The position numbers and the translations under genes were made by a program. Below the pieces are notes generated by a model. It ran no database searches. It was not told the DNA's origin and was given only the letters and a program-made list of their open reading frames with translations. DNA of 64,000 nt from positions 29,636,001-29,700,000 of the forward strand of contig JANJGN010000026.1 of NCBI GenBank assembly GCA_026770705.1, in the 5' to 3' direction. Positions 1,780 to 50,549 of the stretch are shown here, one piece after another. The DNA is from Isurus oxyrinchus. Its lineage: Eukaryota. Each line of letters starts with the position of its first letter. Position 1 is the first letter of the stretch.

Positions 1780-1925
1780 GAAACTGAAAAGGCAATGGGC
1801 CCTGATAATATCCTGGCAATAGTACAGAGGATTTGTGCTCCAGAACTTGCTGCGCTCCCAGCTAAGCTGTTCCAGTGCAGCGACAACACTGACATCTACA
1901 TGGCGATATGGAAAATTGCCCTGTA
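1780..1925 (+). mobile_element. Non-LTR retrotransposon RT fragment (same family as 51480-53880)
   Basis: Translates as LEALETEKAMGPDNILAIV..CAPELAALPAKLF..WKIA; near match to 52495-52650. Confidence 0.75.
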
Positions 1926-2049
1926 CGCAAAAGACATTCGGCCGTATGCCTGGGCCCTCACTTCCCTCAGTACCGTCCTCAATTACTTGCTTACATTTTC
2001 AGGTCCCAACATTTCCAGTTGAGGCTACATTGCTACTGCATGTGTAGCA

Positions 2050-8100: not shown

Positions 8101-8250
8101 ATTTTTAATCAGTAAGGGAATCAAGGGCTTTGGGAAAAGGCAGGAAAGTGGAGTTCAGGGTTATCAGATCATCCACGATATTGTTGAATGGCGGAACAGA
8201 CGCGATGGGCCGAATGGCCTACTTCTGTTCCTATGCTTTATGGTGTTATT
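5170..8250 (+). mobile_element. Near full-length CR1-type LINE ORF2 (APE endonuclease + reverse transcriptase), frameshifted
   Basis: ORFs 5926-8284 carry GNSEHNMVEF, GNYRPVSLTS, LDFQKAFDKV, LFTIYINDL, KFAHGTK (FADDTK) and CR1 C-terminal RGH...FSQR..NLW motifs. Confidence 0.92.
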
Positions 8251-18495: not shown

Positions 18496-19229
18496 CTTTT
18501 CAAAAACAAATTTGGATTTTGAAATTTAACGTTTTGTCCCGCTCTCTCGACATAGCCCAGCATCAATTTTAAAGTAGACCCACACTATACCAACTCCCTG
18601 TAGCCCGATGTTAACCCAAAACAACTCTCAGGGCTCCCTCCCTACCCTATCAGCAATGGTCAATCCCAAAATTAGTCCAAATAAACCTAATAATTTGTTT
18701 CCCTGTTCTTGTTTCTCCGGCCAGTTGCTACATGCCCAATCTGGCAGATATGTCATTCTGGACTCGGCAAGCTCAGTCAGTAGCGCTGCTGCCATCAGTC
18801 TTGATCAGGGACATTGAAGACCACCACCCGACTATTTCCAATGTCATTGTGTCCCTCAGCGCTTCTACAACGTGGTGCTGAATACAGGGGGACATCGATT
18901 CACCAGTCGATAAAAGGATGTTTTGTGATAACCAATAAAAGGCTTCCTTAACCTCCCGGCTATATATCAGTGTGCCGCAATCTCTGGGCAATTTAGCTTG
19001 TTAGTGGGATAAGACATACCCAGAAATGATGGTGGAGGAGTCTGTAAGTACGTTATTGAGTATGACTATGTTAGAATGTTGCTTGTCTTTTTGGTAGGGC
19101 AGCTGTCCCAATTTTGTCACGAGCCCCCAGAGGGTACAGAGAAAGACATAGCACGGTCGAATGGGCAGAGTTTGCTTTTGTTGTTTCTGGTGTTTAGGTC
19201 GATATCCGGTTTTATTCCTTTTGAACTTT

Positions 19230-19560
19230 CTGCAGTGGTTTGGTACAAATGAGTGGCCTGTTGACGAATTTCTAAGGGCAGCTGAAAGTCACCCACATTG
19301 CTCTGGGGTTGGAATCACATGTAGCTCAGACAAATTAAGGACGGCAAATTCCCTTCCCTAAGGAATATTAGTGAACTAGATGATTTTGTTTGAATCACAA
19401 TCCGACAGGTTTCATGGCCACCATTAATGAGGTTTGCTTTTGAGCCCAGGTTTAATAATTATTTGAATTTAAATGCCTCCAGTCGCTGTGGACGGATTTG
19501 AACTCAAGTCCCAAGAGCATTAATCTGAGTGAGTGGACTAGCAGTCCAATAATATTGACT
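19230..19560 (-). mobile_element. tRNA-derived SINE
   Basis: ggatttgaactcaagtcccaagagcatta...ggactagcagtcca tRNA-like head (reverse); similar copies at 40730-41050 and 41660-41860. Confidence 0.55.
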
Positions 19561-19597
19561 CAGGTCAATATGGGCTCTGCGGTCCCTGCGCCATGTG

Positions 19598-20590
19598 TTA
19601 CTGGCGTACTCTGCAGCAACCCGCCTTCCATTGAAAAGTTTGGGACCTGAAAATGTAGAGCAGAGGATTAAGGACAGTGTTCAGGAAACTGATGGCCCAG
19701 GTATACGGACGAACATTACAAATGTACCAACTCACGGTTTCCTTTGTGGGATCCAGCAGGCTCTTCAGAATAAAAGACATTTCAGTGACGTGATATGGGG
19801 CAACACAGATAAGCAGAAGAGCCAAAATTGTCCAAATGGTTCTCAGCACTTTCTTCTTCATCATTTCCATAGATTCCTTCCCAGTTCCCACTTCACTCAG
19901 TTTCTTTGCACTCAGGGCATAGCAGGTCAAAAGGATTAGGATTGGGATGAAAAACACCACAATTTCTTGGCACAGCATAAGCACCAGGTTCTGCTCCCAG
20001 GCTGAAACCTGAGCACTGCATGTAAATGAACTGCCCAACGGGCCTCTTGCAAGGAAAAAGACCACCAAGCTCAGGGTGAGCATCATCAGCCAAGCTGCTA
20101 TTGACAGAACAACGTAATATCTGGGCTTTCTCCAGGCATGAAACTTGATGGGGTGAACAACAGCGATGTACTGGTCAATAGCAATGCAGGTCATGAAGAA
20201 AGGGCTGCCGTAAAGGCTGATTATGTTGGTGCTAATGACGAAATAATCAACTAGTTGTACTGAAATAAATGAATGTATAATTTTCAGAATGGTAATTGCA
20301 GAAGCCAGGATTATAAAGATGTTCATGATGATTAAGTCCAGAAGGAGGACATCAGAGGGCGATGAGATTTTCTTTCCTTTGATATGCCATAGTGCAACTG
20401 AGTTCGCAGTGATACCTAATAGGAAGCATGGGCCGAGAAAAATGGGAATGACAAGCAAGTGCATCATGAAAGTGACTTCTTCAGCGTTGCCCATCGAGGC
20501 TCCAAGGCTAGCATTTCCATTCTGAATGGTTGAGTTGATTTCCAACCAAGTTCGGGTGACTGTTACATTCCAGGTCACAAAAAGAGCCAT
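19598..20590 (-). CDS. Intact single-exon class A (rhodopsin-like) orphan GPCR, P2Y/LPAR-like, 330 aa
   Basis: Seven hydrophobic segments; GxxxN (GITAN), LYGSxxFMTCIAIDQYIAVVHP, TM4 W, FFIP, CxAPYH, NTVLNPLLY; N-glycosylation sequons in the N-terminus; C-terminal CC. Confidence 0.92.
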   Translation of the reverse strand: MALFVTWNVTVTRTWLEINSTIQNGNASLGASMGNAEEVTFMMHLLVIPIFLGPCFLLGITANSVALWHIKGKKISSPSDVLLLDLIIMNIFIILASAITILKIIHSFISVQLVDYFVISTNIISLYGSPFFMTCIAIDQYIAVVHPIKFHAWRKPRYYVVLSIAAWLMMLTLSLVVFFLARGPLGSSFTCSAQVSAWEQNLVLMLCQEIVVFFIPILILLTCYALSAKKLSEVGTGKESMEMMKKKVLRTIWTILALLLICVAPYHVTEMSFILKSLLDPTKETVSWYICNVRPYTWAISFLNTVLNPLLYIFRSQTFQWKAGCCRVRQ

Positions 20591-20984
20591 TGGTGTTCTG
20601 ACAAAAATGTAGAACAGCCAATCAAAAAATGTGGAGTAACTTCCAGAGGATATTGCCCAATCACGGTTGAGATTGCAGTCTCAGCTCATTGGTTTTTGAA
20701 GGAATAAACTGGATCTCAATGTCATTAATCCTCTCTCAGTGGTTTAGTTCGCATGAAGATCCCATCTGAAAACAGTGGAAACCAATTCTGCCAAGCGATT
20801 CCTGTGGCAACTGGTTACAGGATCCCAAAGATGGTGAAGGACTCAGAAGCCTGAAAATGGACAGATATGCAGAAAGCTGTTGAATTGTGAAATTTCCTGT
20901 ATTGCGAATATGAGAAAGTTGGATAAATCTATCAATGTCTTTCAGTGAACCTCTCTCAGGGATATATCTGCCTATTATCTATCC

Positions 20985-21425
20985 ACTTGGGTTTAAAAGA
21001 ATGAGTAGTGAACTCATTGAAATATATAACATTTTAAGGGGACTTGACAGGGTTGATGCCTGGAGGGTGTTTCCTCTTGTGGGAGAGACTAAAACGAGGG
21101 GACATGGTTTAAAAAAACTAAGCGATTTACCTTTTAAGACAGAGATGAGGACATTACCTTTCTCCCAGAGGTTCGTTCGTCTGTGGAATTCTCTTCTTGA
21201 GAAAGGAGTCGATGCTGCGTCTTTAAATTGATTCAAGACTGAGTTAGATAGATTTCTGATGCACAAGGTAGTCAAGAGCTATGGGCGGAAGACAGGAAGT
21301 TGGAGCTGACAGCAAGGTGGAGCTGACAGCACAACCAGATCTGCCAGGACCATATTGACTGGCGGAGCAGGCTCAAAGGGCCATATCGCTAGCTCCTGCT
21401 CCTAAGTCATATGTTCCTATGTTCC
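20985..21425 (+). mobile_element. CR1 LINE 3' end
   Basis: ELIEIYNILRGLDRVD..TRGH..FSQR..RLWNSL; atgttcctatgttcc tail. Confidence 0.85.
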
Positions 21426-21759
21426 CATTAACTGTACAATCGATGGCCACACCCTCAAACAGATGTTGTGTAGTGAAAGGTGCATCTCAGGGAGATATCT
21501 GTGCGTTGAAACGGGTCTTTCGTTGCTGCAACACTGACAATTACACACATATATATATACATTAGCTATGAATTATCTGCCTTTTTATTCCTTTCGTATT
21601 CCTTCTTTTCTTCACACTCACCTCGTTACTGTCACTCTTCTAGTCTCCTCAGAATCATAGTAGCTGAGAATCTAAATGTTTAACAACTGCTCATGGAGAT
21701 GAGCATCGCTGTGGAAAAATCACAAATTTAATCCAAAAGCTCAATCTAGTGTAGAATCT

Positions 21760-22300
21760 GTCACTGTCTTGTGTATGTCTATATCTAACATGCATTTTCC
21801 TTGCTCCGTCTTTCCCTTTCTTCTCCTATCTTTCTTCCCTCGCTCGCCGTGTGTTGAGCTCTCTATCTCACTTTCTGTTTCCCTGTCTCTAAAATTGCTC
21901 TGCTCACCTCAATTCTATTCTATCTTCTTTTTCATTCAATTTTTCGCTTTATCTCTTTCTTGGGCTTTGCGTCTGCCTCTCTTCTCCCCTCTCTGCACTT
22001 CATTCTCTGCGTCTTGCTCACTAAAAATTGTTTGTTAATTTATCACTTGTTGTCCCTACCTACTCTCTAACTTTCTGTGTCTTTCTCTCTGTTTCTGTCC
22101 CTCTCTCCTTCTCCCTGTCTCTCACAGTCTCTCAGTCTCTCTCTCTCTGTCTTTCTCTCTATGCCGCTCTCTCTCTCTGTATATATATATTTAATACGCA
22201 TATTTTTTTTCTGTCTACACTCTGTTCACTTTTTTCACTCTTTTTGTCATGAATTTATTTCCCGCTCACTATCTGTGTGTGATGTTTGCACCTCCCTCTG
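21760..22300. repeat. CT-rich low-complexity tract
   Basis: Directly visible. Confidence 0.75.
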
Positions 22301-22789
22301 ATTAGTGGCCATGTGATGATGCTTCATTTTCAGTCTGTTTACCTTTCTCTGTCAATAGGAGTTTCCATTTTACACCATTAACCATTCTGCCCGACATGAT
22401 GTCAAATTCTTCAATTTTGCTAAATATTAACCGAGAGATCAGAACGCACCAAGGCACAACTGGTAACATCAACAATCCCGTGCACTTTCAGCTTCCTTTC
22501 CCACAATCTATCCACCTACTGGTCCTCTCTAATCACACATTTCCGTTCGCTGCGCCACATTCTGGACTCCCAGCCATTTTAGCCAAGCCATGCTCCCTGC
22601 TTATCAATGTCTGCTCTCCGCTCACCCATGTCTGAATTCCTCGCACCGATCCCCACTTTAGTCCACAGGTCTGCATCCTGCTTATCCACTCCCGCTTATT
22701 CATCTCCACTTTCCGTTTTCCCACACAAGCGCTCTGCTCAGGAATCCCTCACTCATCCTGGTCTTGAACCACCCATCCCCTTTCTCTAT

Positions 22790-23340
22790 CATTGGCAGTG
22801 ACCAAGCCAGCATGGACCCTGCCTTTTAACCTGCTGAAAGTGCCACTCACCTCCCGCTTCTTCTTAATCGTTGAGTGTTGGAAAGAAGTGTTTCTCCCCC
22901 CTTGCACATCGACTGCTGGAGTCGGGGAATGTCCAAGTGGTATACAAATTAACCTGTTATTGCAGTGGACAATCGGTTTGAATGCAAGCGGGAAGCGAGA
23001 GGCTTCAGGCCATCCTTCAGTCAACTTGCAAAAGGTGCAAGCAGTTGTTGGGATTCGTTGTCTGTTACAGCTCCTGATCTGCAGTTGGTGCAATTACTCT
23101 ACTCGTACATGACATGAGAATCTCAGGCTCCTCCCCCACTCCCACATTGAAATGATTGCTGATCTCCATCTCAATGTAAATCTATTATTGTGGAGCTGGT
23201 GGCTTATTGTCAACTCACCCCTGGGATTAGAGTTTTAACCCGGCTGTAGACAGAGAGGATGGAGTTCTCCTCTCTCTCCTGCGTGACTGCTTTGGATAGA
23301 GAAACAGGCAACGACTTTACACCCTCTTTGCCCTGGGGTC
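22790..23340 (-). other. Paralogous conserved block upstream of GPCR; probable 5' exon ending in a GT donor (GAG|GTGAGT at 22850)
   Basis: Aligns by eye with 36830-37420, including the donor; the GPCR ATG is preceded by an acceptor (ttttgtcAG aacacca ATG). Confidence 0.5.
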
Positions 23341-23949
23341 AGCTGAGATTCCCATCACCTTGACTCCTGCCGTTTTCTCTATTGCAGGCCCTGTAGCACA
23401 TATGCTGTCATTATGCAATAAAATTCCCAATACTGGCGGGCCACCTAATCCTATTACATTGTTCGAGACCCTGATGTCCAGTCTCACCGTTCAACATATC
23501 AGGTGTTACTCCACACTGGGGTTTCCAAACCCTCAGGGTGACACTCAGAATTTTGAATGTTCTCCACAATGACTGCAAACAGAACTGTTTGACTATTGAG
23601 TGGGTGCGTTGGAACAGTTGTATATGACTTGGCTAGTATTTCAGAAACCCAGAATGGCGCGCTGGGGACTCAGGTTCATATCCCACCACAATCGATAATA
23701 GAATGAAACGTCTGATAATGACCATGTGCTATGCCAGTTGCCTGTTTCATTAATGTCCGCTCCACAGGGCAATCTGCTGCCCTTACCAGGGCTAGCTTGC
23801 ATATGATTTCAAATTCATGGCAATGTGGTTGGCTCTTAAATGCCCTTGGGCAATTCGTGATGGGTATTAAATTGTGGTTCCTGCATCCCATGAGTAAAAA
23901 AGCTCAAAGTGACTGGGTGACCTTGATTACTTTTCTAATTAGCATACCG

Positions 23950-24560
23950 TTTTTAAAAATTTGTTCACGGAATCTGGATGCCACTGACAAGGCCAGCATT
24001 CATTGCCCATCCCAAACTGCCCTTGAGAAGGTATTGTTGAGTTGCCTTCTTTAACTGCTTCGGTCCCTGTGATGTAGGCCCTGTGATGTATTACTGTTGG
24101 GAAGGGGGTTTTGATCCAGTGACAGTGAAGTGGCGGTACATCTTCAAGCCAGGACGGTGTGCGGCTTGAAGTGAAACTTGCACGTGCTTCCATTGTCCAC
24201 CTGGATGGCAGGTTTGGAAAGTGCTGTAGCCAGAGCCTTGTGATCTGTTGCAATTCATCTTATAGATGGTACACACAGTTGCCACTGTGCTTTGATGGTG
24301 GAGAATGTGATTCTTTAAAAATGTGGTAGATGGGGTGCCAATCAAGCAGACTGCCTTATCAAGGTGGTGTGAAATTCTTGAGTGTTGTTGGAGCTGCAAT
24401 CATCCAGGCAAGTGGGGGGAACTCCATCACACTCCAGACTTGTGCTTTGTAGATGGTGGCCAGGCTTTGTGGAGTCAGGGGGTGAGTTAGTCACTGCTGA
24501 AATCCCAGCCTCTGACCTACTCTTGTAGTTACAGTATTTATGAGGCTGGTGCACTCCAGC
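23950..24560 (-). mobile_element. Non-LTR retrotransposon 3' fragment (51480-53880 family)
   Basis: LDKAVCLIGTPSTT...TVATVCTIYKM. Confidence 0.75.
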
Positions 24561-25059
24561 TCCTGATAAATTTGTCCTTCGCCTGTTTATCTCTTCCCCC
24601 TGCTTATTAAACAAATTGTTTTAGATAGAATTACGAACTTCAAAATAGACAGAGTGTACAGCTACCCGAAGGCCCTCCATATCTATAGCTCAGTGCACTC
24701 GGGGCGTTAACTGGTAGAATTCTACTCTAATTATACACCTATCGGTTTTAACGCTGCAAAAGGAAAGCTGCTTGGTAGAATTATTAGGAGTTTGACCTAG
24801 GATTGCTTGGATATAAATCTTTTTTTTACTGGATGCAGGCGTCCATCATTAGCCATCCCTAATTGTCCTTGTCAGCCTCAGCCATGTGCTGTGAGATTAG
24901 AGATGCAAGTAGTCCAAGTTTCTTCTCCTAAATATTTAATAATGGGCATTAGATTTGTAATCTGATTTCAAATTCCAACACTGGATGCGAACAGCGGTTC
25001 CTAGGATACTAACCCAGTGACAGCACCACTACACCCTCGCCTTCCTCTCCCTGTTAGTG

Positions 25060-26055
25060 AAAATGTTAGACAGACTGAGCTTCTTTGGAGTTTCGAAGAG
25101 TGGGGGGTGATTTAATTCAATATAAGTATGAAGTATAAAAGCAAAAAACTCCGGATGTTGGAAATCCAAAACAAAAACAAAAGTACCCGGGAAAACTCAA
25201 CAGGTCTGACAGCATCTGTGGAGAGGAACACAGTTAACATTTCGAGTCCAAATGACTCTTCATCGGAACTAAGGAAAAATAGAAAAGAGGTGAAATATCA
25301 GTTGGTTTAAGGGGGCTGTGACAGGTAGAGCTGAAATGAGGGGCAGTGATATGTGGAGATTGCCCAAAGATGTCATAGACAAAAGGACAAAGAGGTGTAG
25401 ACGGTGGTGATATTAGCTAAGGAATGTGATAATTGTGACATTAAGGGTAGAAAGCAGGACGAGCAAGGTATAGATAGCCCTAGTGAGGGTGGGGTGGGGG
25501 GAAGGGATCGAAATAGGCTAAAAGGTAGAGATAAAACAATGGATGGAAATACATTTAAACATAATGGAAATAGGTGGGAAAAGAAAAATATAAATAAATT
25601 ATTGGAAAAAGGGGGTTGGAAAAGGGGGTGGAGATGGAGGACAGAGATCATGACCTAAAGTTGGTGAAGTGTATAAGATTCTGAATGGCACTGACGAGGT
25701 GTTTGTGGAAAGTATGTTCCCTCTGGAGGGTGAGTCCAGAACTAGGGGGCACTGATTTAAAATTAGGGGTTGCCCCTTTAGGGCAGAGATGAGGAGATTT
25801 TTTTCTCTCAGAGACTTATGTGACTTGGGAATTCTCTGCCTCCGAAGGTGATAGAAGTGGAGTTATTGATTTTTTTAAGGCAGGTGTACTTAGATTCTTG
25901 TTAGGCAAGGGAATCAAAGGTTATTAGGGATAAATGGGAATGTGGAATTCTAAACACAAACAGATCAGCCATGGTCTTATTGAATGGTGGAGCGGGCTCG
26001 AGGGGCAGAATGGCCTACTTCTGCTCCTAATTTGCATGTTCGTTTGTATGTTCGT
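25060..26055 (+). mobile_element. CR1 LINE 3' end interrupted by a Penelope-like insertion
   Basis: CR1 sequence at 25060-25130 resumes at ~25665 and ends in a gtatgttc-like tail. Confidence 0.75.
25135..25662 (-). mobile_element. Penelope-like element 3' end/pseudo-LTR with hammerhead motif
   Basis: Homologous to 61964-62500; minus strand 25232-25270 reads AGTT CCGATGA A GAGTC attt g GACTC GAAA T GTT AACT. Confidence 0.75.
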
Positions 26056-27735
26056 ACATTAGGGACTTATGGTTATAAAGCGTGGCTTTATAGGAAAGAT
26101 TATGTCTGAGGCATCGATATATATACCCCACGTTTTTTAAAACAGGTCCAAAGATGCCGTGTAAGGAATGAATCATAGATATTATCTGCTCAGACTTCCA
26201 AAGAACACCTGATGAAATACCACAAGAGATTTCTATTAAAGCCTTTGATGTTAGGGGGTGACATACTCAATTTGATTAGGTCAGCTGACAGGATATAGGT
26301 AAAATAAGTTTGGGATAGATTTGGATCTGTTTATCAAGCCCAGACCCAGACAAAAAGCACTAATTCTCCTCTTTCTGATGGGGTACGTTCAGACCATGTA
26401 ACTACAGAGGATCTAGATTTCCATACTTAAAGGTGACACTGAGCAATTTCCACGTTGTCAGCACGAACTGCAAATAGAGATCGATGTCTATTCAAAGTTA
26501 CTCTTGTTATGCTTATTTCACATTCATTTGCACTTCCGTTAATCTGTCTTTTTAACCTTGGACTATCCATCAGTCTGGGTAACTATTGATCTGCTGGTTT
26601 ATCTATCTATTTGTGTACAGATCATGAGATTTGATGGTGCATTAAGTAGCGTCCATACTTCTGGGCAATAAGCTTCCAGTTCCACTCCAGGACATGTTGC
26701 CCACGGAAGATGCATTCGTGACATGGCAAAGCAGATTGATTATCACCCTGTAAATCCTTCCTTACACCTGATGGCAGGTGGTAAATGCAGGTGATTATTT
26801 GTTTATATACGGACACTTCACTGTACCGCCTTTTTCATGTAAGTGTTTTAAGCCACTCTACTACCTACGTCTGTAGTTTATTTTTATCATCAGCAAGGCT
26901 TGATTTATAAAGAAACGCTATTGTTTTGGCGTAATGACCCGACCTTTATTCAGGCAAAATGCTAATCGTTGTCTTTCTTATCGACAGATAGTCATGGATA
27001 CAATTCTACATTGAGATATGGTGACAGGACGTCCATTTGAAGCTACAGCATTTCCTTGAATCTTGAAACCTTTACTGTCTCGTCGTTCTCTCTCTCTTTC
27101 TCTTTCTCCCATTCAATTCTTCAAACCCGTCAAGAATCCAGCCGATTCGTTGGAATGTCCGTGACCTTTGCTAACATGTTACCAGACAGTAGGGGGCGCT
27201 GCAATTGTTCGTTCAATCCTGATTGAATCGAGACATGGCCGGGCAGCCAGAGGATGATTTCTGGACCCAACAGTTGGAACCCCTAATTAGCAAAATCTTT
27301 ATAAAGACCTATCAATGTAAGACGTGAGAGCAAAGTATTAAATTGAAAGGAAAGCTTAATGCATTTTCCCAAGCCACCCTGCTCCCAGCAGCTGAAGTCC
27401 TTGGTAATATACAAAAGCTGTTATCACCCTTGCCTCGGGCAGGCAGAAATATAGACCTGTCTGTAGATAAATGGAATGATAACACGTGCATGAACATAGC
27501 AGATATGGGTTGCAAAATGGGTTCGGGATGAATGAGCTGCACACAAGATGGAGCTGCTTTTGTTGTACGGTGTTTCTTTGGTTAAAACATTTAGCTTAAT
27601 TAAGGTTACTTAGGATCTCAACGTATTCCATTCATTCTGTTCAAACATTACTGTGGAAAAGCACAAAGAGGGACTTTAAACTAAGGCTGAAAGCCGATCA
27701 ATATGGGGGTGCGCTGGGGTGTATGTTTCCAAGCA

Positions 27736-28804
27736 TTACACAATGCAGCAGCACGATCTTCAGTTAAAGTTCTGGGACCTGAAACTGCACAGCAAGGCAG
27801 AGAAGGAAATGAGAACTCAGATGTAAAATGGAACTTTGCACCAGTAAAATGCTATGACTGGATATGATGGATCTAGCAGATCCTGAGCACCAAAATATAT
27901 TTCAGGGATGTGATAACGGGCAAAGCCGAAAAGGAGAAGAGCCAACATTCCAGCATCTACAGAATTACCTGGAAAAACTCAGCAGGTCTGGCAGCATCGG
28001 CAGAGAAGAAAAGAGTTGACGTTTCGAGCCATTTTTCCAGCATCCGCAGTTTTTTGTTTTTATTCCAGCATCTATCTTCAAAATTTTCTTTTCATCAACT
28101 CCATGGGTTGCTTCCCAGTTCCCACTCCTGTCAGTTTCTGTGATGTCAGGACATAGAAGATGAACAGGATCCGGGCTGGAATAGCAAACGACATAATTCC
28201 AGAAATCAGCATGAAGATTTCCCGTTGCCTCCATGCTATGGACATTTCCTTGCATGAAACTATTATATAATATCTTTATCAGTCTGAAAATAGTAATTAA
28301 ACTCAGAGCTAAGACTTCCAGCCAAGTTTCAATAGACAGTATAACATAGTATCGATGCTTTCTCCAGGCCTGAGACCTGGTGGGGTGGGCAACAGCTATG
28401 TATTAGTCAACAACAATGCAGGCCATGAAAGGTGCATACAAGAGAAGGATAAAACTATTATATAACTGCATTGTGATATAATCTAGGGTAATAGCAATAA
28501 TGTCAACTGTGGAAGCAACAATAATCAACAAGTTGGTGATGGTTAAGTCCAGCACAAGCACATCAGATGTTGACGAGAGTTTCTCTAATCTTATGATGTG
28601 CCACTAAGCAATTGCATTCCTACTAATACCCAATACAAGTAATAAGCTAAAGAGGCAGAGGAAGGTGATCGTTTTAACGTGATCCAAAGCATGGAAAGTG
28701 CTATCAGTTGAGGTCACAAGACTTGTATTTCCACTCTGATTGGATGGGTTAATCTGAGGCGAGGGTGTGAGGACTGTTACATTCCAGCTCACAAATTTAT
28801 CAAT
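27736..28804 (-). pseudogene. GPCR paralog (copy 2), multiple stops and frameshifts, Penelope insertion
   Basis: FVSWNVTV...LGISRNAIA*WH..SDVLVLDLTITN..FMACIVVD*YIAVAHP..AWRK.RYYV..RYHIPE..FRSQNFN*RSCCCIV*; ATG position reads ATT. Confidence 0.9.
27960..28061. mobile_element. 102-bp Penelope-like inverted fragment with 13-bp TSD
   Basis: Flanked by attccagcatcta at 27947-27959 and 28062-28074. Confidence 0.8.
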
Positions 28805-29139
28805 TTGATGTAACATAGAATATGGAGAGCAGTGGAGAAAATAATGAACGTATATCGTACAATAACAGTTGAGACTACGTGGTCAGATTATTGGCTGTTA
28901 AGTTCCCACTTTTATCTCCAATACGTCAATGCTATTTCATTCGTAAAGTTTGGCTAATGTACTTCTCGGAAAACTATGGATACCATCTGATATGAGAGAT
29001 CCCTCTGGCGACAACATGCGGGAATCAGAATCCTGTAAATTTACAGATGGGAATAAAGTTATTGAAGTTCTCAAAATAATGTCATCCTGTATACTGGAAA
29101 GCGAGCTATCTGGACACTGAATAATGTTTCTCACTCTCC

Positions 29140-29680
29140 CTCAGAAATATGCCTGTCCGCTGCTTGGTATCTCTAATGACTCTCCCTGTGCATGGACAGT
29201 TATTTCCCTGCCTCTCTGTTTGAGCGAGATATTTGCAAACTGCCCACACTGACCCCCAGTCTCTTTCCCTAGGGAAGATATTTGAACCCTGTCTGAGATT
29301 CCCTAGCCTTTACCTTTTATCTAAATGAAAACTGATTAATGACTCCGACTCCCAACTGCTCATGGAAATATCTTCACGCTGGCTCATGTCTTCCAGTCCC
29401 TCACCTCAGAAAGATATTGGTACACTGATTTGTATCTTTCCGTGCCTCCATCTCAATGAAATATTTGTACACTAACCAATTCTTCTGAGTCTGCCTCCTC
29501 TGGGGAGGTATCTGCACGCTGACTGACATTGTTTAAGTTTTTCTCTCACAGGAAGATAGTTGCCCACTGACTGGTGCCACCCTTTGCGCTTTGAGTCAGC
29601 AAAATATCTAAAGATTGCATGGTGTCCCTAAGCCCCTCTCTTGGAGGTACATCTGCACACTAACTGTTTGCTCTCAGTCC
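29140..29680. repeat. ~40-bp degenerate minisatellite upstream of GPCR copy 2
   Basis: About 12 units of gagatatytgcacactgactggtg-like sequence. Confidence 0.65.
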
Positions 29681-29754
29681 CTTTTCGAAGGCGGGGGTAG
29701 GAGGAGGGGTAGGGGAGGGGAGGTGGTGGGTGCGTGTGAGGAGGAAGTAGCAGA

Positions 29755-30270
29755 GAAGATGGAGTAGCGTTATTGCCACTGGACTAGTAATTCAGCGACC
29801 CAGAGTAATGCTCTGCACACTGGGGCTCGAAACAATGTGGGTGACCCTGTAATGGCCTAGCAAGTCACTTAGTTGTATCAAGCCGCTAGAAAGCATATAA
29901 GAAGTGAAACCGGACGGGCAACCCGCCATCAACTTAGGCACCGGAAACTACAACAGCAAACTCAACCCTGTCGACGTTGCAAAATCCATCTTACTGACAT
30001 CTGGAGGGTTTGTGCCAAAATTGGTAGAGCTGCCTCACAGACATGTAAGCAATAGCCTGAAATAGTCATCCTCACGGAATCATACATGAGAGATAATGCC
30101 CCAGGCACCAGCATCACCATCCCTGGGTATGTCCTGCCCCAACGGCACGGACAGATCCAACAGAGGTGGCGGCGCTGTGGTACACAATCGGGAGGGAGTT
30201 ACTCTGGGAGCCCTCAACATTGACTCCGGGCCCCACGAAGTCTTATTGCATCTGGTCAAACATGGACATC
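29755..30270 (+). mobile_element. SINE-like head plus endonuclease start of a non-LTR element
   Basis: tRNA-like head, then PEIVILTES..ITIPGYVL..DR..RGGG (APE motifs). Confidence 0.6.
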
Positions 30271-31084
30271 TACACCTGATAACCTTTGATTCCTTTGCCT
30301 AACAAGAATCTACCTAGTAGATCGGATGTCAGTACACACTGAGATTTCCATATCCTCAATGCGATATTCAACATTTTCCATATTGTTGACATGAACTGCA
30401 AACGACCATTGAAGGACCAGGGCAACGTATTCATCAATATTTAAAGTAATTCATTCACTGCTGAGGTTTTTCTTACGTCTATTATTTGCCATCTCCAAAG
30501 TAAATAACTCTCTCCCTCTCGTGTCGCAGGTTTATGCCTGTTTCCTTATGCAGCAAAATCTGTCTCAGCTCCTTTATGTCTCTATCTTTGTAGCTAACGA
30601 TTAGACCCCCGATTTAGATTGATGCAGGACTAAGAAGAAAAAGCCGAGCGGAAAATTTACCGAACAGCCCAGCTTTCTTTCGCTACATGTAATTGTACCG
30701 GACATTTTTTTTAAAAAGGAAGGCGCCGCTGATTTGTGTAATGAATTATTCATTTATTTACTCAAATGCTGAACTTTGTATACCGATTGTCAATGAAATA
30801 ATTAGAAACACAGGTGAGCAAACATACCGTTCGAAATTGTACAACATTTCCTTGAGGATAGAACTCGTCCTTGGTCACCTCCCATCCCGTCTTCTGGTAA
30901 TAAGTAACATTATTAATTAAACACTCAAGTCCGTATTTGGAAAACACCTGTATTACCTCTCCTAACATGACGCCAGATTGGAGGAACCATTGCAGTTGTT
31001 ATTTAGTTCTGAAGCCTCCAACCATTCAAGGTTGAACGCACCCTTTGTGTCTAGAGGGAGCCTTGTTGCACATCCCTCATGGGA

Positions 31085-31390
31085 ACATAGGAACAGAGGA
31101 CTTACGAGCAGAAATAGGCAATTCAGCACTAGGATTTTGCTCCGCCATTCGATAAAATCATGGCAGATCTTGTTATTGTCTCAACTCAGCATTCTGGTCT
31201 GGAAGCTATATTTGCCTCTCAAAACAAATATCCAATTTAGCCTTGAATAAAGTCAATGGCCCAGACACAACCGTTTTCTCAGAAAGAGAATGTCACAAGC
31301 GAATGGCCATCTGAGAGAAGACAAAAGGTCTCCTCACCTCTCTCTTAAACAGGAGGCTGCTTCTTTTGAAACAATGTCCCCCTAGCTCTA
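31085..31390 (-). mobile_element. CR1 LINE 3' end
   Basis: gaacataggaac tail (reverse) and CR1 3'UTR. Confidence 0.6.
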
Positions 31391-33414
31391 GCTCTAGTTC
31401 TCATAATCTGGTAAGGGATTCAAAAATAGTTTGCTTCATATTCAATCCTGCTCTGAACTCCACGTTCCAGCATCCATTTTCCCACATCTTTGCCTCCAGT
31501 TCATCACTAATTTAATGTCAGATTGTCTTAGTTCAATGAAGCGAATTCTCCACTCTGAATCAGGAGGTTATATCCTCACTCAAGATTGAACCCGTCATTT
31601 AGGCCGCATTCACCGCTAGCGCTGGAAGGGCACTGCCCAGTCGGCGGTGCTGCCTTCCTGGACGAGAGATTAAACATTCTTCCACAATTCGTGCCAACTC
31701 CAGCCAATTCAATTTTCTCTCCTAATGGAAAGTGCCTGTGTAAACGGATCGGATTGCAATTACATCCTCTTGCCTCCGCAGAGCCCTATCACTTCCATTT
31801 TACTTTTGTGTCTCAGCAGCAGGGGATTTCCGGGGTTGGATTCAACTCAACGTCTCTGCTTTGCACAATGTCCCAAATCTTGCTATTCCTGTTTAATAAG
31901 GATATCAGCTCATTTTGAAAGGTGGATGGAATGGATGATGTTGAAGTGGGCCTCAATTACATCCACACTTCAGCGGTTCAAGAAGCCAGCTCACCAGCAG
32001 CTTCTTAAGCGTAACTAGGGATGGGCAATAGACGCTGGCCCAGCCAGCAAAGCCCACATCCCGTGAATGAATAAAAAATCCCACTGGTCTAACTCTCCCT
32101 GAGCATTCCAGCCCCATTGCAGCTGTAGAGAATCTCCAATTACAGAAACATCCTGACCTCTCTGCTCCCCAAATTGCTCCAACTCTTGCTCGTTAGCTAT
32201 AAATACAAACTTGAAAACAAAGCCTTATGCTGAAGCGATCACAGATTGTATGCCCTTAACTTGGGATTGGATTGTTTCTGCGCGCCCTGCCTCGAAGTTC
32301 CCGGCCCTCAGACCCCACCCCAGATGATATCCACGTTCGGTCTTGGTTCCTTATGTGAAACGCCAGTGGAGGCGAAGAGCAACTCCCTAAAGCAAGCCAC
32401 TCGCAGCAGTAAAATTTGTTTTTTATATTCTATTCATGGTCCATTCAGTGAAGCTCGCATAAGGCTAGAAAGCCTCCTGGAAGTCCCGGCTGATAGACGC
32501 TGCTGCATTTTGTCCTCAGTCCAAACTTTCCCCGTTGCCCTACATTACATAACACCGCAGCTACTGCTTATCCGGGATGCAATACTTTAAAACCTTCATA
32601 AATTACATTTATTCTGACGCTCCACCCTTTGCTATTGAATTTTCATCAATTTTCCTATTGGACATCAAACTGAAATTTGGAAGAGGCATATCTGAAACAG
32701 CAACAATGACGTGCATTTATATAGGCCCTTTAATGGAATTATACAACCCACAGCCCTTCGCAGGGTCATTTTCAAACAAAATTACAAAGCGAAAGACTTA
32801 GGGAGATGGTAGGTCAGAGCAGCAAAAACTTGCTCAAAGGGGTAGGTTTTAAGAAGTGTCTCAAAGGAGAATAGGTATTGGTCAGCTGTGATTAGATACA
32901 AATGGCAGCACTCGGCTGAATATGCATCGAGCAGCTGGTTGGGATGTCAATGCCGCGAATCCAAACCTCTTCTAGAGCTGAGATCTGGATAGATTATTGT
33001 AGTGAAAGTGCTTGATCAGCCTCCTGCGTTTGCTACCGTTCTCTTCACTTAGCCATCGTGTTTGTCATGTTATTTATGAAACTACATTTGAAACCCTTAT
33101 GTATCCTTCCGCAAACCCACAATCGTTGGCCTTGAGGGAGCTGCAGAGTCTATTTACATTATTGCTAGTGTTCTGTGATTATAGATACTGAAAGAGACAA
33201 AGTTGCAGTTGAAGGGACAGATAACCACATTGAATGATTCATAGATGCAGTGATAGACACAGTGAATGAGACAGGTGAACTGACACATGTAGGCACAGGG
33301 CGAAAGTCCAATTATGAGGCCAATAGGGACGTGAAAAGGGCAGAGATAAATATAGATGCAAATATATATATTTCACGTGGAGATAGTTAGATTTGGACGT
33401 TTAGGGAGAGATGT

Positions 33415-34435
33415 GTTGGCATCCTGCCATCCACAAGAGATGATGATGAGCACGCAGCACACAATCCATTTAAGTGGGGTCTATTACCTTGGTGCACCTT
33501 CATGAGGGTTGCGAGGGCCAGCCCTTGAGAGGCAGGTTCAGCCACAATTCAGCACATAAAGCCGTGAAGTGACGTTGCAGCTTGTTGTTCTTAACATGAG
33601 CGCCTGTTGCCAGGCTGCAGTAGCCATTGGTCACGGGGGTAGTGCACGTCAGCCCATAAAAGGTGTCGCCATTTTCCCATTTCTCCAGCTACTGACATCC
33701 AATACCGACCGTGGGTGTTCAGGCCCTTCACGTCAGGCCTGACAGCTTCCTTGAAGCAGAGCCCTGCCGCCCAGGTCGTGATAAGTCACCATACGGAAGA
33801 TACCTAGGTTTTTGGCAATCTTCCATTCTGTGGATATGCCTGATCTACCGAAGCTGCCACTGTTTGATTGGTGCCAGCACACTTGGGAGTTATGCCTTTG
33901 AGAGAGCTGTCAAATCCGTGGTACTGTCCTGTTGGACTCTGCCCAGAATGCACCACAGGCAACAAAGATGGAAAGTATTGAGCTTCTTTGACTGGTAGCC
34001 ATAATTCACCAATATTTTACCGCTATGAAACAAGGTAATGAGAGCATGGGCCTTATAAGCAATCGGCTTGATCTAAAGGGGCAAGTTTGAGTTACACCAC
34101 GCACGTTTCGTGGGTTGGGCAAAGATAGTGGTTGCAATCGCATGCATACATTGGGCTTTGCATCAAGGGAATGATACCGTGGACCCCAGGTAGCAGAAGT
34201 TGCTAATCACTTCAAGTGGGATATTCTTTACTGTGATCAGTCGTGGAGATGTCCACTGAAACCTTGTCCCAAGACCATAGTTTACTTGACACTTATATTC
34301 AGGGCGAACCAGTGACAGACATGGGAAAGACAACCTATGAGCATCGTCAGTGCAGAGTCCTGATTGGGACTTTTGCATTTGCTTTCAATCCTGAACGATT
34401 GCAGAGCTTGCTGTCTGACCTAGTCTGCAGGTAGA
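33415..34435 (-). mobile_element. Decayed RTE-clade LINE fragment
   Basis: LEVISNFCYLGSTV, then RVW.NSKL..K..AY..LNTFHL..L..ILG on the minus strand. Confidence 0.7.
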
Positions 34436-35016
34436 CTACTCCCACAATGAGAGATAGAGATAGATATAGAGAAAGAAAGGTAGGAACACATAGAGATATA
34501 GTGGCATAGAGCGACATGCAGGTAGATAGTGAAATATAGATAGAGAGATAGATAGATATTTGGAGAGGCAGAGGTACGTAGACAATAATGGAACGATTAT
34601 GAGATACGTTGATAGATGGACACTTAATGATGCATAGCTAGAAAGATGAAACATGCATGATAGTTAGATGGAAATACACATTGAAGGATACTGAGAGTGA
34701 TAGGCAGATAGAAAGAAATATACACAGACAGAGGAGTAAATAAATGGACAGATGGCGAATACATGAGTAAACAACATTTACAAAAGCCAAAAAATACATC
34801 GAGATAGACACAAGTTTAAGATTGGAGAGATTGCACTAAAATTTATTCTTCTTAAAATGGTGTAAAATTTCTTCCATTTGCCCAAACAAGATAGCTTTCT
34901 TTTGCATTTCTTTCAGCTCATTCTCTCTGAGTACAATTTTACGAAGGAGAAAATGACGTTTTATTTTTAATTCAGACTCTGTGGGTATCAGGATAATGGT
35001 CACTCTTTCCAGCACG

Positions 35017-35989
35017 TTACACAGCGCAGCAATGTGATCTCCATTGAAAGGTTGGGACCTGAAAATGTACAGCACGGGATTAAGGAAAGCAGATAGGGAA
35101 GTGAGGGCCCAAGTGTATGTCTTAACATGGCACATGTAAAAAATTGAGACTTGATACCATGGATCTATCAGGCCACGACTCACAAAATACAATTCGGAGA
35201 TGTGATACGGGGAAAAGCAGAAAATGAGGAGAGCCAGGATTCCTGAAATTGTTTTTAGCACTTTCTTCTTCATCAGCTCCATGGATTCCTTCTCAACCCC
35301 CACTTCGTTCAGTTTCTTTGCTATCAAAGCATAGCAGATCAACAGGACTGGAACTGGGATAACAAATAATATAATTTCAGAAAATAGCATGAAGAGTTTC
35401 CAAGATGCATTCGTTAAAGTCTTGTCCTTGCATGAAATGCTTTCATCTACGGTGGTTCTTGTCATGAGAAAGGCCACCAGGCTCAGTGTTAAGACTACCA
35501 GCCATGTTGCAATGGACAGAACGACGTAGTATCGGAGCCTTCTCCAGGCCTGGGACCTGATGGGATGAGCAACTGCAATGTACTGGTCAACAGCAATGCA
35601 CGTCATGAATGGCGGGTTGCCATAAATGTTGACAAAAGCCATGAGCAGGTGGGCTTCAAGGAGTGAATTTGTGAACTTCCATCCTGGGATCAAGTGAATA
35701 AGAGAAAATATAGATGACAGGATAACCAAGGCGTTAGTGATGGTTAAGTCAAGTAGGAGGACGTCAGTTGCTGATGTGACTTTCTTCGGCCTTCTGATTG
35801 CCGCAGTGACATTGCGTTCCCAGCAATACCCAACACAACCGTGAAGCTAAGGAGACAAGGAAGGACGATCCTTTCAATCTTTTCCATTGCTTCGGAGATC
35901 CCATGACTTGCATTTCCAGTCTGATTGGTTGCATTGGCCTCTGTCCGGGGTGGAACGACTGTTGCATTCGAGCTCATGAACGTAGCCAT
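35017..35989 (-). pseudogene. GPCR paralog (copy 3), intact except for two 1-bp deletions (~35799 and ~35044)
   Basis: ORFs 35744-35989 and 34836-35729 join with one frameshift; FMTCIAVDQYIAVAHP, CFSPYH, FLNPVLY; ancestral end WRSHCCAV* is out of frame. Confidence 0.88.
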
Positions 35990-39166: not shown

Positions 39167-39241
39167 CAATGGGTGTTCCTGTTAATTCCCAACAGAGGGC
39201 GCTCTAACACCGTTTAACAGAAACAACAATCCCACCTCGAT

Positions 39242-39441
39242 AACAAAAACAGAATTACCTGGAAAAACTCAGCAGGTCTGGCAGCATCGGCGGAGAAGAA
39301 AAGAGTTGACGTTTCTCGAGTCCTCATGACCCTTCGACAGAACTCTTTTCTTCTCCGCCGATGCTGCCAGACCTGCTGAGTTTTTCCAGGTAATTCTGTT
39401 TTTGTTTTGGATTTCCAGCATCCGCAGTTTTTTCTGTTTTT
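39242..39441. mobile_element. Penelope-like fold-back insertion with 13-bp TSD and hammerhead motif in the loop
   Basis: TSD atcccacctcgat at 39229-39241 and 39442-39454; inverted arms ~39242-39307 and ~39341-39406. Confidence 0.85.
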
Positions 39442-39959
39442 ATCCCACCTCGATTGCGAGTCACAGGGACCTTCCAAAAAAATCATAACAAATCACAAAC
39501 CTCAACATTAAGAGGTGAAAAACACTTGTGAAATTGTATTAGTTAATTTCAAGTCGAATTTGGACTATTGCCGACCGTCATAAACCGATTTGATCACTTT
39601 AATTTATTTTTTGCCTTTTAATGCAGTTTCAGTGACTGTCTGTAATAGTGAGTTCCCCTTTCCCCATCTCGCCTGTCAGGTTCTTGGAGCCTTTGGTCGC
39701 GGCCTGTTCTCAGGATTTATTTGTTCAGAGTGTGTTGCTGGGCCAGACACATTTTGTTCACAACGAGCAGAGTTCACCAGATCGTTAACACAAACCTCAG
39801 GTATAGGGTCCCCATCCAGCTTCAGAACGTTTCCTTAATGCTGGGATGTTTTCTGTTACCATTATTAATCTCGAGTTTACTGGTGATGATTAACAGACCA
39901 GAGTTTCACTCTCTCCACTCCCGTCTCTAAAGGTGCAGCCATTCCTCTATCAGGACATT

Positions 39960-40329: not shown

Positions 40330-40368
40330 AGTTTTTGTACAGGGGCCAGACCGTTTTCCATCACTGTG
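40330..40368 (-). other. Canonical 23-RSS (CACAGTG-23-ACAAAAACT)
   Basis: Heptamer 40362-40368, nonamer 40330-40338. Confidence 0.95.
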
Positions 40369-41151
40369 AGTTTGAGAGCGCAGCAATATATGGTAGTGTC
40401 AGTCAGCTGCATACCCGAGATGGTTAAACTGGTGAATTTATTCGAGGTCTGGAGCTCGACTGAGAAATGGCTTGTAGCGAAATTTGCTTTATCTTCACTA
40501 CCACTCCAATGTTTCCACAGTATAAACTCAGGCTGTGTACCTGGGTGTTGCCAGTGCCAGTATAAATGACAGCTCCTCCGTGTAGTTTCATGAGTACAGC
40601 TTAAAGTCACCGATTCTCCTTCTGCCATAACATATGGGGACAACGGCTAAGTGACAGAGTCTCCATGACCTGCATCTGAACAATATGTTCACGTTTTTGT
40701 TAAATATTCAGGAGATAGGGGTTGTAGGCTTAGGTGGCTGAATCAGCATTTATTGCCTATCCCAGTTGCCCTTGGTGGTGATAATTGAGGGTTTGCTAGG
40801 TCATTTCAGAGGGCATTTTTTGAAAGAGGCAGCAACATTTCTGTGGGCCTGGAGCCACACGGAGACAAGGCCAGATAAGGACGGCAGATTTTCTTCTCCA
40901 AAGGAGAGAACCAGATGGGATTTTACAACAATCGATTCATCATAATTTTTATCCCAGGTTTCTAATGAAATCAAATGTCATAATCTACCATGACGGGATC
41001 CAAACCTGGAACCCCAGAGCATTAACCTGAGTTTCTGGATTACATTGCGTCCCTTCATGGTTTAAAACTGAGAGAAAATATGAAACGTGTGTGGTCCACA
41101 ATTACCTGTCAGAAATTCCCCACACACAACCCAGATGTTGAGTAAACTCAT
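40369..41151 (-). pseudogene. TCR alpha/delta-type V gene V2 with one nonsense codon (leader 41106-41151, V exon 40369-40675)
   Basis: MSLLNIWVVCGEFLT|DAGHGDSVT*PLSPYVMAEGESVTLSC..LYWHWQHPGTQPEFIL..FTSLTISGMQLTDTTIYCCALK; TAG at 40647-40649; canonical GT/AG. Confidence 0.93.
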
Positions 41152-50167: not shown

Positions 50168-50549
50168 ATATGTTCGCCATGTTCCTCACTGGTAGCAATG
50201 TGGTACCTGTTGATTCTATGTTTAGGTGATCAGTTTTTGAAACGTCCTTTTTTTGCCACAATGAGTGGTTAAGATTCAGAATCTCAGGGTCCGCCTTCAC
50301 AATTAACACTTCACGAAGAACAGACCCTGATACGAAACTGCAGTTACTCTACGTCCCATGGCATTCACTATCTCCACTGGGATGTCCAGTATCCCGGAGC
50401 TCCGAGATATTTACTGGGGAAATACAGGCCGGGGCAAGAGGCTAAGCCTCCAGATCTCCCAGAGCGGTTTTCTGCTGATTTGGAAAAATACAAGAAAACT
50501 ATTCCCTTGACTGTCTCTGCGTCTGCCGTGCGTCACATGGACTGAGTGC
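50168..50549 (+). pseudogene. TCR V pseudogene V8 (family A)
   Basis: SG*DSESQGPP..LIRNCSYSTSHGIHYLHWDVQYPGAPRYLL..DLPERFSADLEK..IPLTVS; leader ATA start, splice sites and second Cys lost. Confidence 0.87.

What the first reader, a model, noticed from the sequence alone, without database searches (positions are those of the whole stretch)
19598..35989. Tandem orphan GPCR family with DQY instead of DRY, abutting a TCR V array
Seen: three paralogs on the same strand about 8 kb apart. The intact copy has IDQY, copy 3 has VDQY, and copy 2 has VD*Y (TAA, one change from CAA), so loss of Arg3.50 is ancestral to the family rather than decay. Established: R3.50 is among the most conserved class A residues and supports G-protein coupling; C5aR2, which lacks it, is G-protein-uncoupled. 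Inference: this may be an undescribed lineage-restricted atypical (scavenging or arrestin-biased) receptor family of the P2Y/LPAR-like group, possibly immune-related given its position.
Basis: partly seen in the sequence, partly recalled or inferred. Interest (0 to 1): 0.8.

Follow-up and report, generated by a model that had tools for sequence, protein, structure and literature searches.

The report
Shark-only receptor family lacking the DRY arginine
This shark DNA holds one healthy and two broken copies of a cell-surface receptor gene family found only in sharks and rays, in which an arginine that nearly all such receptors need for signalling has been replaced by glutamine since before sharks and rays split.

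Summary
Three same-strand class A GPCR paralogs lie 7-8 kb apart. Copy 1 (19598-20590) is intact with IDQY. Copy 3 has VDQY but two one-base deletions. Copy 2 is badly decayed, with TAA at the Q codon.

The family is real, small and restricted to sharks and rays. I found 14 annotated proteins from 11 species, and 13 of 14 carry DQY. An exhaustive search of 1.84 billion representatives leaves a gap from 296 to 186 bits below the family. The six closest outgroup proteins all have R3.50.

The family has other shared departures: no C3.25, no ECL1 Trp, N2.50 in most sharks, and a 16-20-residue tail poor in Ser/Thr. Its cytoplasmic face is the best conserved part.

I read it as an undescribed orphan clade with weak delta-group (P2Y/LPAR6/GPR17-like) affinity, probably impaired in G-protein activation. 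The short tail argues against a classical arrestin scavenger. An immune role inferred from position is unsupported.

The scan's other GPCR notes on this genome concern a different, GPR139-like family.

The parts
19598..20590 (-). Copy 1 (A-type): intact single-exon 330-aa class A GPCR gene, stop codon included. It deviates at 3 of 72 strongly conserved family columns, which is within the range of other intact members.
20171..20173 (-). CAG codon for Gln at position 3.50 (IDQY) in copy 1
27739..28795 (-). Copy 2 (B-type) pseudogene. The start codon is lost, there are several in-frame stops including TAA at the 3.50 codon (28403-28405), one frameshift, and a repeat insertion inside TM6. It deviates at 13 of 61 conserved columns.
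35017..35989 (-). Copy 3 (C-type), a recently disabled gene. It has VDQY (CAG at 35583-35585), one-base deletions near 35800 (TM1/ICL1) and near 35050 (11 codons before the ancestral stop at 35017-35019), and Arg in place of invariant Trp68.
1915..2033 (+). Relic of a fourth family member: a TM7/helix 8 fragment with a frameshift, in opposite orientation
40371..40646 (-). Antigen-receptor V exon (Pfam V-set E 6.7e-12, ends YCCALK), 4.4 kb from copy 3 on the same strand
40330..40368 (-). Recombination signal directly after the V exon: CACAGTG, 23-base spacer, ACAAAAACT
50291..50521 (+). Weak V-like relic (V-set E 0.0003, below Pfam's cut-off)

Best explanation
Shown: the window carries a tandem A-B-C cluster of an elasmobranch-restricted clade of single-exon class A GPCRs. 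Only the A-type gene (copy 1) is intact. The three subfamilies and the Gln at 3.50 predate the split of sharks and rays. The clade sits on a very long stem, and its best but weak affinity is to delta-group P2Y/LPAR6/GPR17-like receptors.

Inferred mechanism: the variable outer half binds a still unknown ligand. The outer half is probably held together by a substitute disulfide between the retained ECL2 Cys and a new Cys at the top of TM7, because C3.25 is gone. The activation switches P5.50, Y5.58, C6.47, P6.50 and NPxxY are kept, and ICL2, ICL3 and the inner helix halves are the most constrained parts. The receptor therefore still changes shape and meets a conserved cytosolic partner.

With Gln instead of Arg3.50, and Asn2.50 in most sharks, classical G-protein activation is probably weak or lost. 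The 16-20-residue palmitoylatable tail has almost no Ser/Thr, so a classical GRK/arrestin scavenger cycle is also unlikely.

My confidence in the identity and evolutionary statements is about 0.9. My confidence in the signalling mechanism is about 0.4. The single figure given for this explanation, 0.5, weighs the two.
For: Family limits. 12 shark and skate proteins scored E 2.4e-186 to 1.6e-70, and the next hit was at 1.8e-14 (13 hits among 4299 candidates). An exhaustive HMM search of 1.84e9 representatives gave 4 family clusters at 296-516 bits, then 186 bits, then 148 bits. Members from Narcine and Mustelus were added later.

Trees. The family is monophyletic at 100/100 with a stem of 1.5. 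Copy 1 falls in A, copy 2 with P0007 (B), copy 3 in C, and the rays join B+C at 93/96.

Motifs. DQY is in 13 of 14 proteins. R3.50, C3.25, D2.50 and D7.49 are in 6 of 6 outgroup proteins. C3.25 is absent in 17 of 17 family rows. The ECL2 Cys is kept in all rows, and the YxC at the top of TM7 is present in most.

Conservation. Mean pairwise identity is 0.67 for the inner halves and 0.67 for the loops plus helix 8, against 0.375 and 0.36 for the outer parts. ICL3 reaches 0.82 and ICL2 0.70.

Tail. 16-20 residues follow NPxxY in the nine members with an intact end (copy 1, P0001-3, P0007, P0009, P0010, P0012, P0014), with 1-3 Ser/Thr, against 27-56 residues with 5-11 Ser/Thr in the outgroup. Exceptions are in the Against line.

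Precedents. US28 R129Q, the 'DQY' mutant, is G-protein-uncoupled (PMC5153698). DRY mutants typically lose G-protein activation (PMC7949164).

Structure. The AF2 model has seven helices plus helix 8, mean pLDDT 71.8.
Against: No function was tested. No RNA evidence was found: two small runs that are only guessed to be RNA have zero depth over the whole CDS.

Against a recent paralog seen in another sample's DNA, omega is about 0.81 on 129 codons (4.5 synonymous and 12.5 non-synonymous changes). That is not distinguishable from neutrality.

Two of the three copies here are dead. The white-shark ortholog P0002 deviates at 6 of 69 conserved columns, including a near-invariant Trp.

One member, Mustelus P0187, has DRY.

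The tail contrast is not uniform. P0006 (Chiloscyllium) has 30 residues with 5 Ser/Thr after NPxxY. P0187 (31 residues) and P0011 (37 residues) have longer ends in models whose C-terminal part looks unreliable. P0004, P0005 and P0008 gave no NPxxY match, so their tails were not measured.

Receptors without any DRY motif (taste T2R, V1R; recalled) do couple to G proteins, so Gln3.50 alone does not prove uncoupling.

The delta-group placement is unresolved in the larger tree, and the proposed disulfide was not checked on coordinates.
Confidence: 0.5

Rival explanations
1. One reading: an atypical scavenging or arrestin-biased receptor, like the ACKRs or C5aR2. It would bind and internalise a ligand without G-protein signalling.
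For: Arg3.50 has been lost family-wide. The engineered DQY mutant of US28 is G-protein-uncoupled. DRY divergence is thought to partly explain the arrestin bias of ACKRs (PMC7949164 passage). Ser240 in ICL3 is invariant and could be phosphorylated.
Against: In the nine members with an intact end, the tail after NPxxY is only 16-20 residues with 1-3 Ser/Thr, mostly inside helix 8. The usual GRK phospho-code for arrestin is therefore missing in those members. There is no specific sequence affinity to chemokine or C5a receptors. No assay was done.
Confidence: 0.18
2. A conventional G-protein-coupled receptor that tolerates Gln3.50. It could be a metabolite, lipid or nucleotide receptor, or a small chemosensory family.
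For: Y5.58, NPxxY, P5.50 and P6.50 are conserved, and the Pro-Ile pair in ICL2 is near-invariant. The cytoplasmic face is the most conserved part. The genes are single-exon, about 320-330 aa, with a short tail, a tandem cluster with pseudogenes and a variable outer half, all of which resemble chemoreceptor genes. In mammals, olfactory receptor genes occupy a similar position among TRAV genes.
Against: Non-conservative changes of R3.50 generally impair coupling (and recalled literature). There are only 1-4 annotated genes per species, which is few for an odorant family. Pfam gives no olfactory (7tm_4) match at E up to 0.01. There are no expression data.
Confidence: 0.27
3. An immune receptor functionally tied to the neighbouring antigen-receptor V region, for example expressed in T-lineage cells when the locus opens.
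For: An intact V segment with a 23-spacer RSS lies 4.4 kb away on the same strand. Unchecked scan notes place V signals 17 kb before the window and a NAR-TCR cluster 265 kb beyond it.
Against: Position alone is weak evidence. Olfactory receptor genes are interspersed with TRAV genes in human, mouse and sheep (PMC4574546). The V segment's TCR identity was not established: the best PDB hits are Ig light chains at 65 bits against TCR alpha at 47 bits. No thymus or spleen data were available.
Confidence: 0.06
4. In this species the family is on its way out. Copy 1 would be an open but no longer constrained or expressed gene.
For: Two of three copies plus a relic are dead. Omega is about 0.81 against the recent paralog. 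P0002 carries changes at conserved sites. No RNA was seen.
Against: Copy 1 keeps 69 of 72 strongly conserved columns, like the other intact members at 0-7 deviations. The omega estimate rests on 17 changes. The differences from the paralog are biased to the outer half, 27 of 174 against 12 of 156 residues, Fisher p = 0.04. That pattern is expected under constraint on the inner face.
Confidence: 0.12

Closest known systems
Delta-group P2Y-like receptors (P2Y1/2/4, GPR17, LPAR6, CysLTR2, GPR183) and an unnamed vertebrate 'LPAR6-like' group (P0015 catshark, P0018 turtle, P0016 newt, P0030 sturgeon)
   Same: These are the best sequence matches: P0015 at 186 bits, P2Y4 at 121, GPR183 at 119 and GPR17 at 112. 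They share C-F-x-P-x-H in TM6, H-P after the DRY position, a single exon, and a helix 8 with F-x-W-R-x-x-C-C like P0015.
   Different: The shark family has Q3.50 instead of R, no C3.25, no ECL1 Trp, and no N-terminal Cys for the second P2Y disulfide. It has NPxxY rather than DPxxY and a tail one third as long. It stands on a stem of 1.5-2 changes per site, and its attachment point is unresolved.
Atypical receptors with an altered DRY motif (ACKR1-4 and C5aR2; CMKLR2/GPR1 with DHY is recalled)
   Same: There is a natural change in the DRY motif, and loss of G-protein activation is expected (PMC7949164 passages).
   Different: There is no specific homology to them. The change here is to Gln. The tail is too short and too poor in Ser/Thr for their arrestin and scavenging cycle.
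US28 R129Q ('US28-DQY'), an engineered mutant of a viral chemokine receptor
   Same: It carries the same D-Q-Y triplet at the end of TM3, and it is reported as G-protein-uncoupled (PMC5153698).
   Different: It is an artificial single change in an unrelated, constitutively active receptor. The shark family has had Gln for its whole history and may have compensated for it.
Olfactory receptor genes interspersed with TRAV genes in mammals (OR10G2, OR4E2; Olfr1507-1509)
   Same: These are single-exon class A GPCR genes lying among antigen-receptor V segments (PMC4574546).
   Different: There is no olfactory-receptor sequence signature in the shark family. Homology of the arrangement was not tested.

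Membership tests
Class A (rhodopsin-like) GPCR | Pfam 7tm_1 match above the curated cut-off, and a seven-helix fold | tested here: met
   7tm_1 at E 1.8e-29, 103.4 bits against a cut-off of 30.5. AF2 gives seven helices plus helix 8. Foldseek hits are all class A GPCRs at about 22% identity.
Class A (rhodopsin-like) GPCR | Conserved microswitches N1.50, P5.50, Y5.58, P6.50 and NPxxY | tested here: met
   All are present in copy 1 and in nearly all family rows.
Class A (rhodopsin-like) GPCR | E/DRY arginine at 3.50 | tested here: not met
   Gln in copy 1, in copy 3 and in 13 of 14 annotated members.
Class A (rhodopsin-like) GPCR | TM3 (C3.25) to ECL2 disulfide | tested here: not met
   C3.25 is absent in 17 of 17 family rows and present in 6 of 6 outgroup rows. 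The ECL2 Cys is kept.
Class A (rhodopsin-like) GPCR | Asp at 2.50 (sodium site) | tested here: not met
   Asn in copy 1 and most sharks. Asp in the three ray proteins and in Heptranchias.
Delta-group P2Y-like receptors | Closest sequence relatives, and grouping in a tree | tested here: inconclusive
   The best outside hits are P2Y/LPAR6/GPR17-like. Scores are flat, and the 70-row tree leaves the position open. In the 26-row tree the family joins the LPAR6-like group at only 91/90.
Delta-group P2Y-like receptors | Sequence hallmarks seen in all six P2Y-like outgroup rows used here (their generality beyond these rows is recalled): C-F-x-P-x-H in TM6, DPxxY in TM7, and an N-terminus to ECL3 disulfide | tested here: inconclusive
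   The TM6 motif with H6.52 is present. TM7 has NPxxY rather than DPxxY. There is no N-terminal Cys.
Atypical (scavenger or arrestin-biased) receptors | No G-protein activation; arrestin recruitment or ligand internalisation | not testable with these tools
   This needs cell assays. The only indirect evidence is an altered DRY and a short Ser/Thr-poor tail in most members.
Vertebrate olfactory receptors | Pfam 7tm_4 signature | tested here: not met
   Only 7tm_1 and Srsx were listed at E up to 0.01.
TCR alpha/delta V segment (the neighbour) | V-set exon with a 23-spacer RSS, and specific similarity to TCR V rather than Ig V | tested here: inconclusive
   The V-set match and the 23-spacer RSS are met, and there is no J segment in the window. 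The best PDB hits are Ig light chains at 65 bits, then TCR alpha at 47 bits. The protein search was blank.

The most novel reading that the evidence does not exclude
Elasmobranchs may carry a receptor clade that has worked since before sharks and rays split (hundreds of millions of years by recalled dates) without Arg3.50 or the TM3-ECL2 disulfide, and in most sharks without Asp2.50, while keeping its cytoplasmic face under the strongest constraint. That would be a natural case of arginine-independent transducer coupling: either G-protein activation through Gln3.50 or a partner that is neither G protein nor tail-bound arrestin.
Probability: 0.3. Interest if true: 0.75.

Novelty: new variant of a known kind. 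Interest (0 to 1): 0.52.

Why it matters
Arg3.50 is the residue that contacts the G protein in class A receptors, and natural families that lack it are few and informative. Here the loss is fixed across a whole old clade, together with loss of the canonical disulfide. The inner face nevertheless stays the most conserved part.

That makes a clean comparative system of Q-bearing family, R-bearing sister and Q-to-R or R-to-Q swaps. It could be used to ask what the arginine is really needed for.

The finding also adds an unnamed receptor family to cartilaginous fishes, which are reported to be poor in GPCRs (PMC8455134, passage read). It shows that the automatic names of these genes (opioid-like, somatostatin-like and so on) are misleading.

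It also offers a shark parallel to the GPCR genes embedded in mammalian TRA loci.

Tried and rejected
Orthology to the receptors named by NCBI (opioid, somatostatin, CXCR1, GPR183, LPAR6, P2Y2): rejected. Family members score 296-516 bits against the profile, and any named receptor scores at most 121-186 bits.

The Mustelus DRY protein as a sign that DRY is typical: rejected. It is nested inside the C clade beside DQY proteins, and its model lacks TM7.

Olfactory receptor identity: rejected.

Fold search gave only generic class A hits.

The 70-row tree did not resolve the sister group.

Naming the V segment failed. The protein search was blank and PDB hits mix Ig light and TCR alpha chains.

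A search for J segments found none.

P0020, a teleost GPCR with EQY, gave no PDB hit at 1e-25.

Literature. 'DQY motif' in GPCR papers means an opioid pocket triad (listing and abstracts only). 'R3.50Q' returned 0 papers. Searches found no description of this family. Neither did passages of PMC12227049, PMC11979771 and PMC8455134. The expression tables of PMC11979771 and the gene-family lists of PMC8455134 could hold data on these genes that I could not see.

Expression. No run on record as RNA holds the gene. Two small runs guessed to be RNA gave zero depth on the CDS.

Full report
**What is there**

The - strand holds three related receptor genes, starting at 20590, 28795 and 35989.

- Copy 1 (19598-20590) is an open 330-codon frame. 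It matches Pfam 7tm_1 at E 1.8e-29. Its TM3 end reads ATT GAC CAG TAC, that is IDQY.
- Copy 3 has VDQY, also with CAG. It carries one-base deletions near 35800 and near 35050. The second moves the reading frame 11 codons before the ancestral stop. It also has Arg where every other member has Trp68.
- Copy 2 has no start codon. It has stops at several places including TAA at the 3.50 codon, a frameshift, and an insertion in TM6. That insertion shares a stretch with repeats elsewhere in the window.
- A TM7 relic lies on the other strand at 1915-2033.

The corrections are that copy 3 is broken and that the sister codon is CAG rather than CAA.

**The family**

A word-indexed search found 12 shark and skate proteins at E 2.4e-186 to 1.6e-70, then a turtle P2Y2-like protein at 1.8e-14. 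That is 13 hits among 4299 candidates.

A profile search read all 1.84 billion cluster representatives. Four family clusters scored 296-516 bits. The next protein, the catshark 'LPAR6-like' P0015, scored 186 bits, and the rest scored 148 bits or less.

An electric-ray member (P0014) and a Mustelus member (P0187) bring the total to 14 annotated proteins from 11 species. The best matches are white-shark proteins at 95% and 88% identity, so the window is from a related shark.

No chimaera, bony-fish or tetrapod member appeared. The source names disagree with one another: mu- and kappa-opioid-like, LPAR6-like, CXCR1-like, GPR183-like, SSTR4/5-like and P2Y2-like.

**Phylogeny**

In a 26-row tree the family is one clade (100/100) on a stem of 1.5 changes per column. 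It contains:
- an A group: copy 1 with white shark, catshark, bamboo shark, horn shark and cow shark;
- a B pair: copy 2 with catshark P0007, 100/99;
- a C group: copy 3 with catshark, Mustelus and horn shark, 99/97;
- a ray clade that joins B and C at 93/96.

The A/B/C split and the tandem cluster are therefore older than living sharks, and probably older than the shark-ray split. Two catshark members of different types share one contig, as listed.

A 70-row tree with 60 of the next-best representatives again gives the clade full support. It leaves the attachment point open between P2Y-like and somatostatin/chemerin-like groups.

Other evidence on affinity:
- PDB profile scores are flat: P2Y4 121, GPR183 119, GPR17 112, kappa-opioid 112 and SSTR2 110 bits.
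- ESM Atlas neighbours are GPR35-, P2Y13-, GPR55- and LPAR6-like clusters.
- Foldseek gives generic class A hits at about 22% identity.

I file it as a deeply divergent orphan clade with weak delta-group affinity.

**Derived characters**

- DQY is in 13 of 14 annotated proteins and in two window copies.
- The exception, Mustelus P0187, has DRY. It is nested beside DQY proteins in the C group, and its model ends without TM7.
- All six nearest outgroup proteins have R3.50, C3.25, D2.50 and D7.49.
- In the family, C3.25 is missing in 17 of 17 rows and the ECL1 Trp is gone.
- The ECL2 Cys is kept, and a new Cys sits at the top of TM7 in most members.
- Position 2.50 is Asn in most sharks but Asp in the rays and the cow shark.
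- In the nine members with an intact end, the tail after NPxxY is 16-20 residues with 1-3 Ser/Thr, ending just after a Cys-Cys pair. The outgroup has 27-56 residues with 5-11 Ser/Thr.
- The tail contrast has exceptions. P0006 has 30 residues with 5 Ser/Thr. P0187 and P0011 have longer ends in models that look unreliable there. P0004, P0005 and P0008 gave no NPxxY match and were not measured.

Among the 146 next-best representatives, my pattern found a DRY-type motif in 86. The only Gln in the middle position was in one fused teleost model, P0020.

**Constraint**

Across 13 aligned members, mean pairwise identity is 0.67 for the inner halves of the helices and 0.67 for the inner loops plus helix 8. 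It is 0.375 and 0.36 for the outer parts. ICL3 (0.82) and ICL2 (0.70) are the most conserved segments.

Copy 1 departs from 3 of 72 strongly conserved columns. Other intact members depart from 0-7, and copy 2 from 13 of 61.

Against this, DNA contigs of another sample (organism A, coded) contain an ortholog-like form and a paralog-like form. Over the 390 bases where the listing is complete, the paralog-like form translates to the residues of white-shark P0001. On those 129 codons, omega is about 0.81 from 4.5 synonymous and 12.5 non-synonymous changes. That is too few to separate from 1.

The 39 protein differences from P0001 are biased to the outer half: 27 of 174 residues against 12 of 156, p = 0.04.

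**Expression**

No run on record as RNA holds the gene. Two runs of about 150 million letters, only guessed to be RNA, have zero depth in all bins over the CDS and touch only flanking repeats. This says little either way.

**Mechanism**

An engineered R129Q 'DQY' US28 is described as G-protein-uncoupled (PMC5153698, passages). DRY mutants typically lose G-protein activation while keeping arrestin signalling (PMC7949164, passages). That favours impaired G-protein activation here.

The retained switches and the strongly conserved inner face argue that the receptor still engages a partner. The short tail, almost free of Ser/Thr in most members, argues against the usual arrestin scavenger cycle. 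These steps are inference. The alternatives are listed as rivals.

**Neighbourhood**

One V-set exon (E 6.7e-12) ending YCCALK is followed by CACAGTG, a 23-base spacer and ACAAAAACT at 40330-40646 on the same strand. A weaker V-like relic lies at 50291-50521.

No J-like segment is in the window, which fits a translocon-type V region. Its TCR identity is not proven, however. Unchecked scan notes place more V signals and a NAR-TCR cluster nearby.

Mammalian TRA loci hold olfactory receptor genes among their 5' V genes (PMC4574546). Position therefore gives no support for an immune role.

**Novelty**

I found no paper on this family (supplements closed). The proteins exist only as automatic predictions.

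Noticed in passing
window 27930-28080 (-), compare 39214-39486 and 63395-63643: The insertion that splits TM6 of copy 2 translates in one frame to a stretch (…STLFFSADAARPAEFFQVIL…) that is also found in an ORF at 39214-39486. A related stretch is at 63395-63643. It is therefore a dispersed repeat that landed in the pseudogene.
   Followed up: partly
window 5926-8284, 9435-9839, 14835-15263, 16109-16459, 52403-53718 (+) and 61351-63131 (-): ORFs that look like fragments of reverse-transcriptase (LINE-type) elements fill most of the sequence outside the receptor genes. This is judged by eye from the translations only.
   Followed up: no
organism A runs X1, X2 laid on window 18598-21590: The other sample's DNA holds two forms of the gene. 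One has 1.3-3% differences at depth about 21. The other has 4-9% differences at depth about 55, and its translation equals white-shark P0001. That second paralog is not in this window.
   Followed up: partly
P0011 (Heterodontus) against window 34960-35075: The horn-shark model contains …GDHAAALFNMLKSVTIILILTE…, the same shifted-frame reading as the read-through end of copy 3. That annotated 'protein' probably also comes from a frameshifted or mis-modelled C-type gene.
   Followed up: no
P0002 (Carcharodon): The white-shark ortholog of copy 1 is annotated from Met34 only. It deviates at 6 of 69 conserved columns, including Cys for a near-invariant Trp in ICL2, so it may be decaying there.
   Followed up: partly
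P0020 (Prochilodus magdalenae, 929 aa): A fused three-domain teleost GPCR model carries E-Q-Y at the DRY position in all three domains. This is a possible independent loss of Arg3.50 in a fish lineage.
   Followed up: partly
window 55542-55607 (-): A short V-like fragment (22 residues, tblastn E 0.39). It may be chance.
   Followed up: no
window residues 1-37 of copy 1 (20480-20590): The N-terminus is conserved across the family (MATFVSWNxT…NST…NxS) and carries three or four N-glycosylation sequons within about 30 residues.
   Followed up: partly
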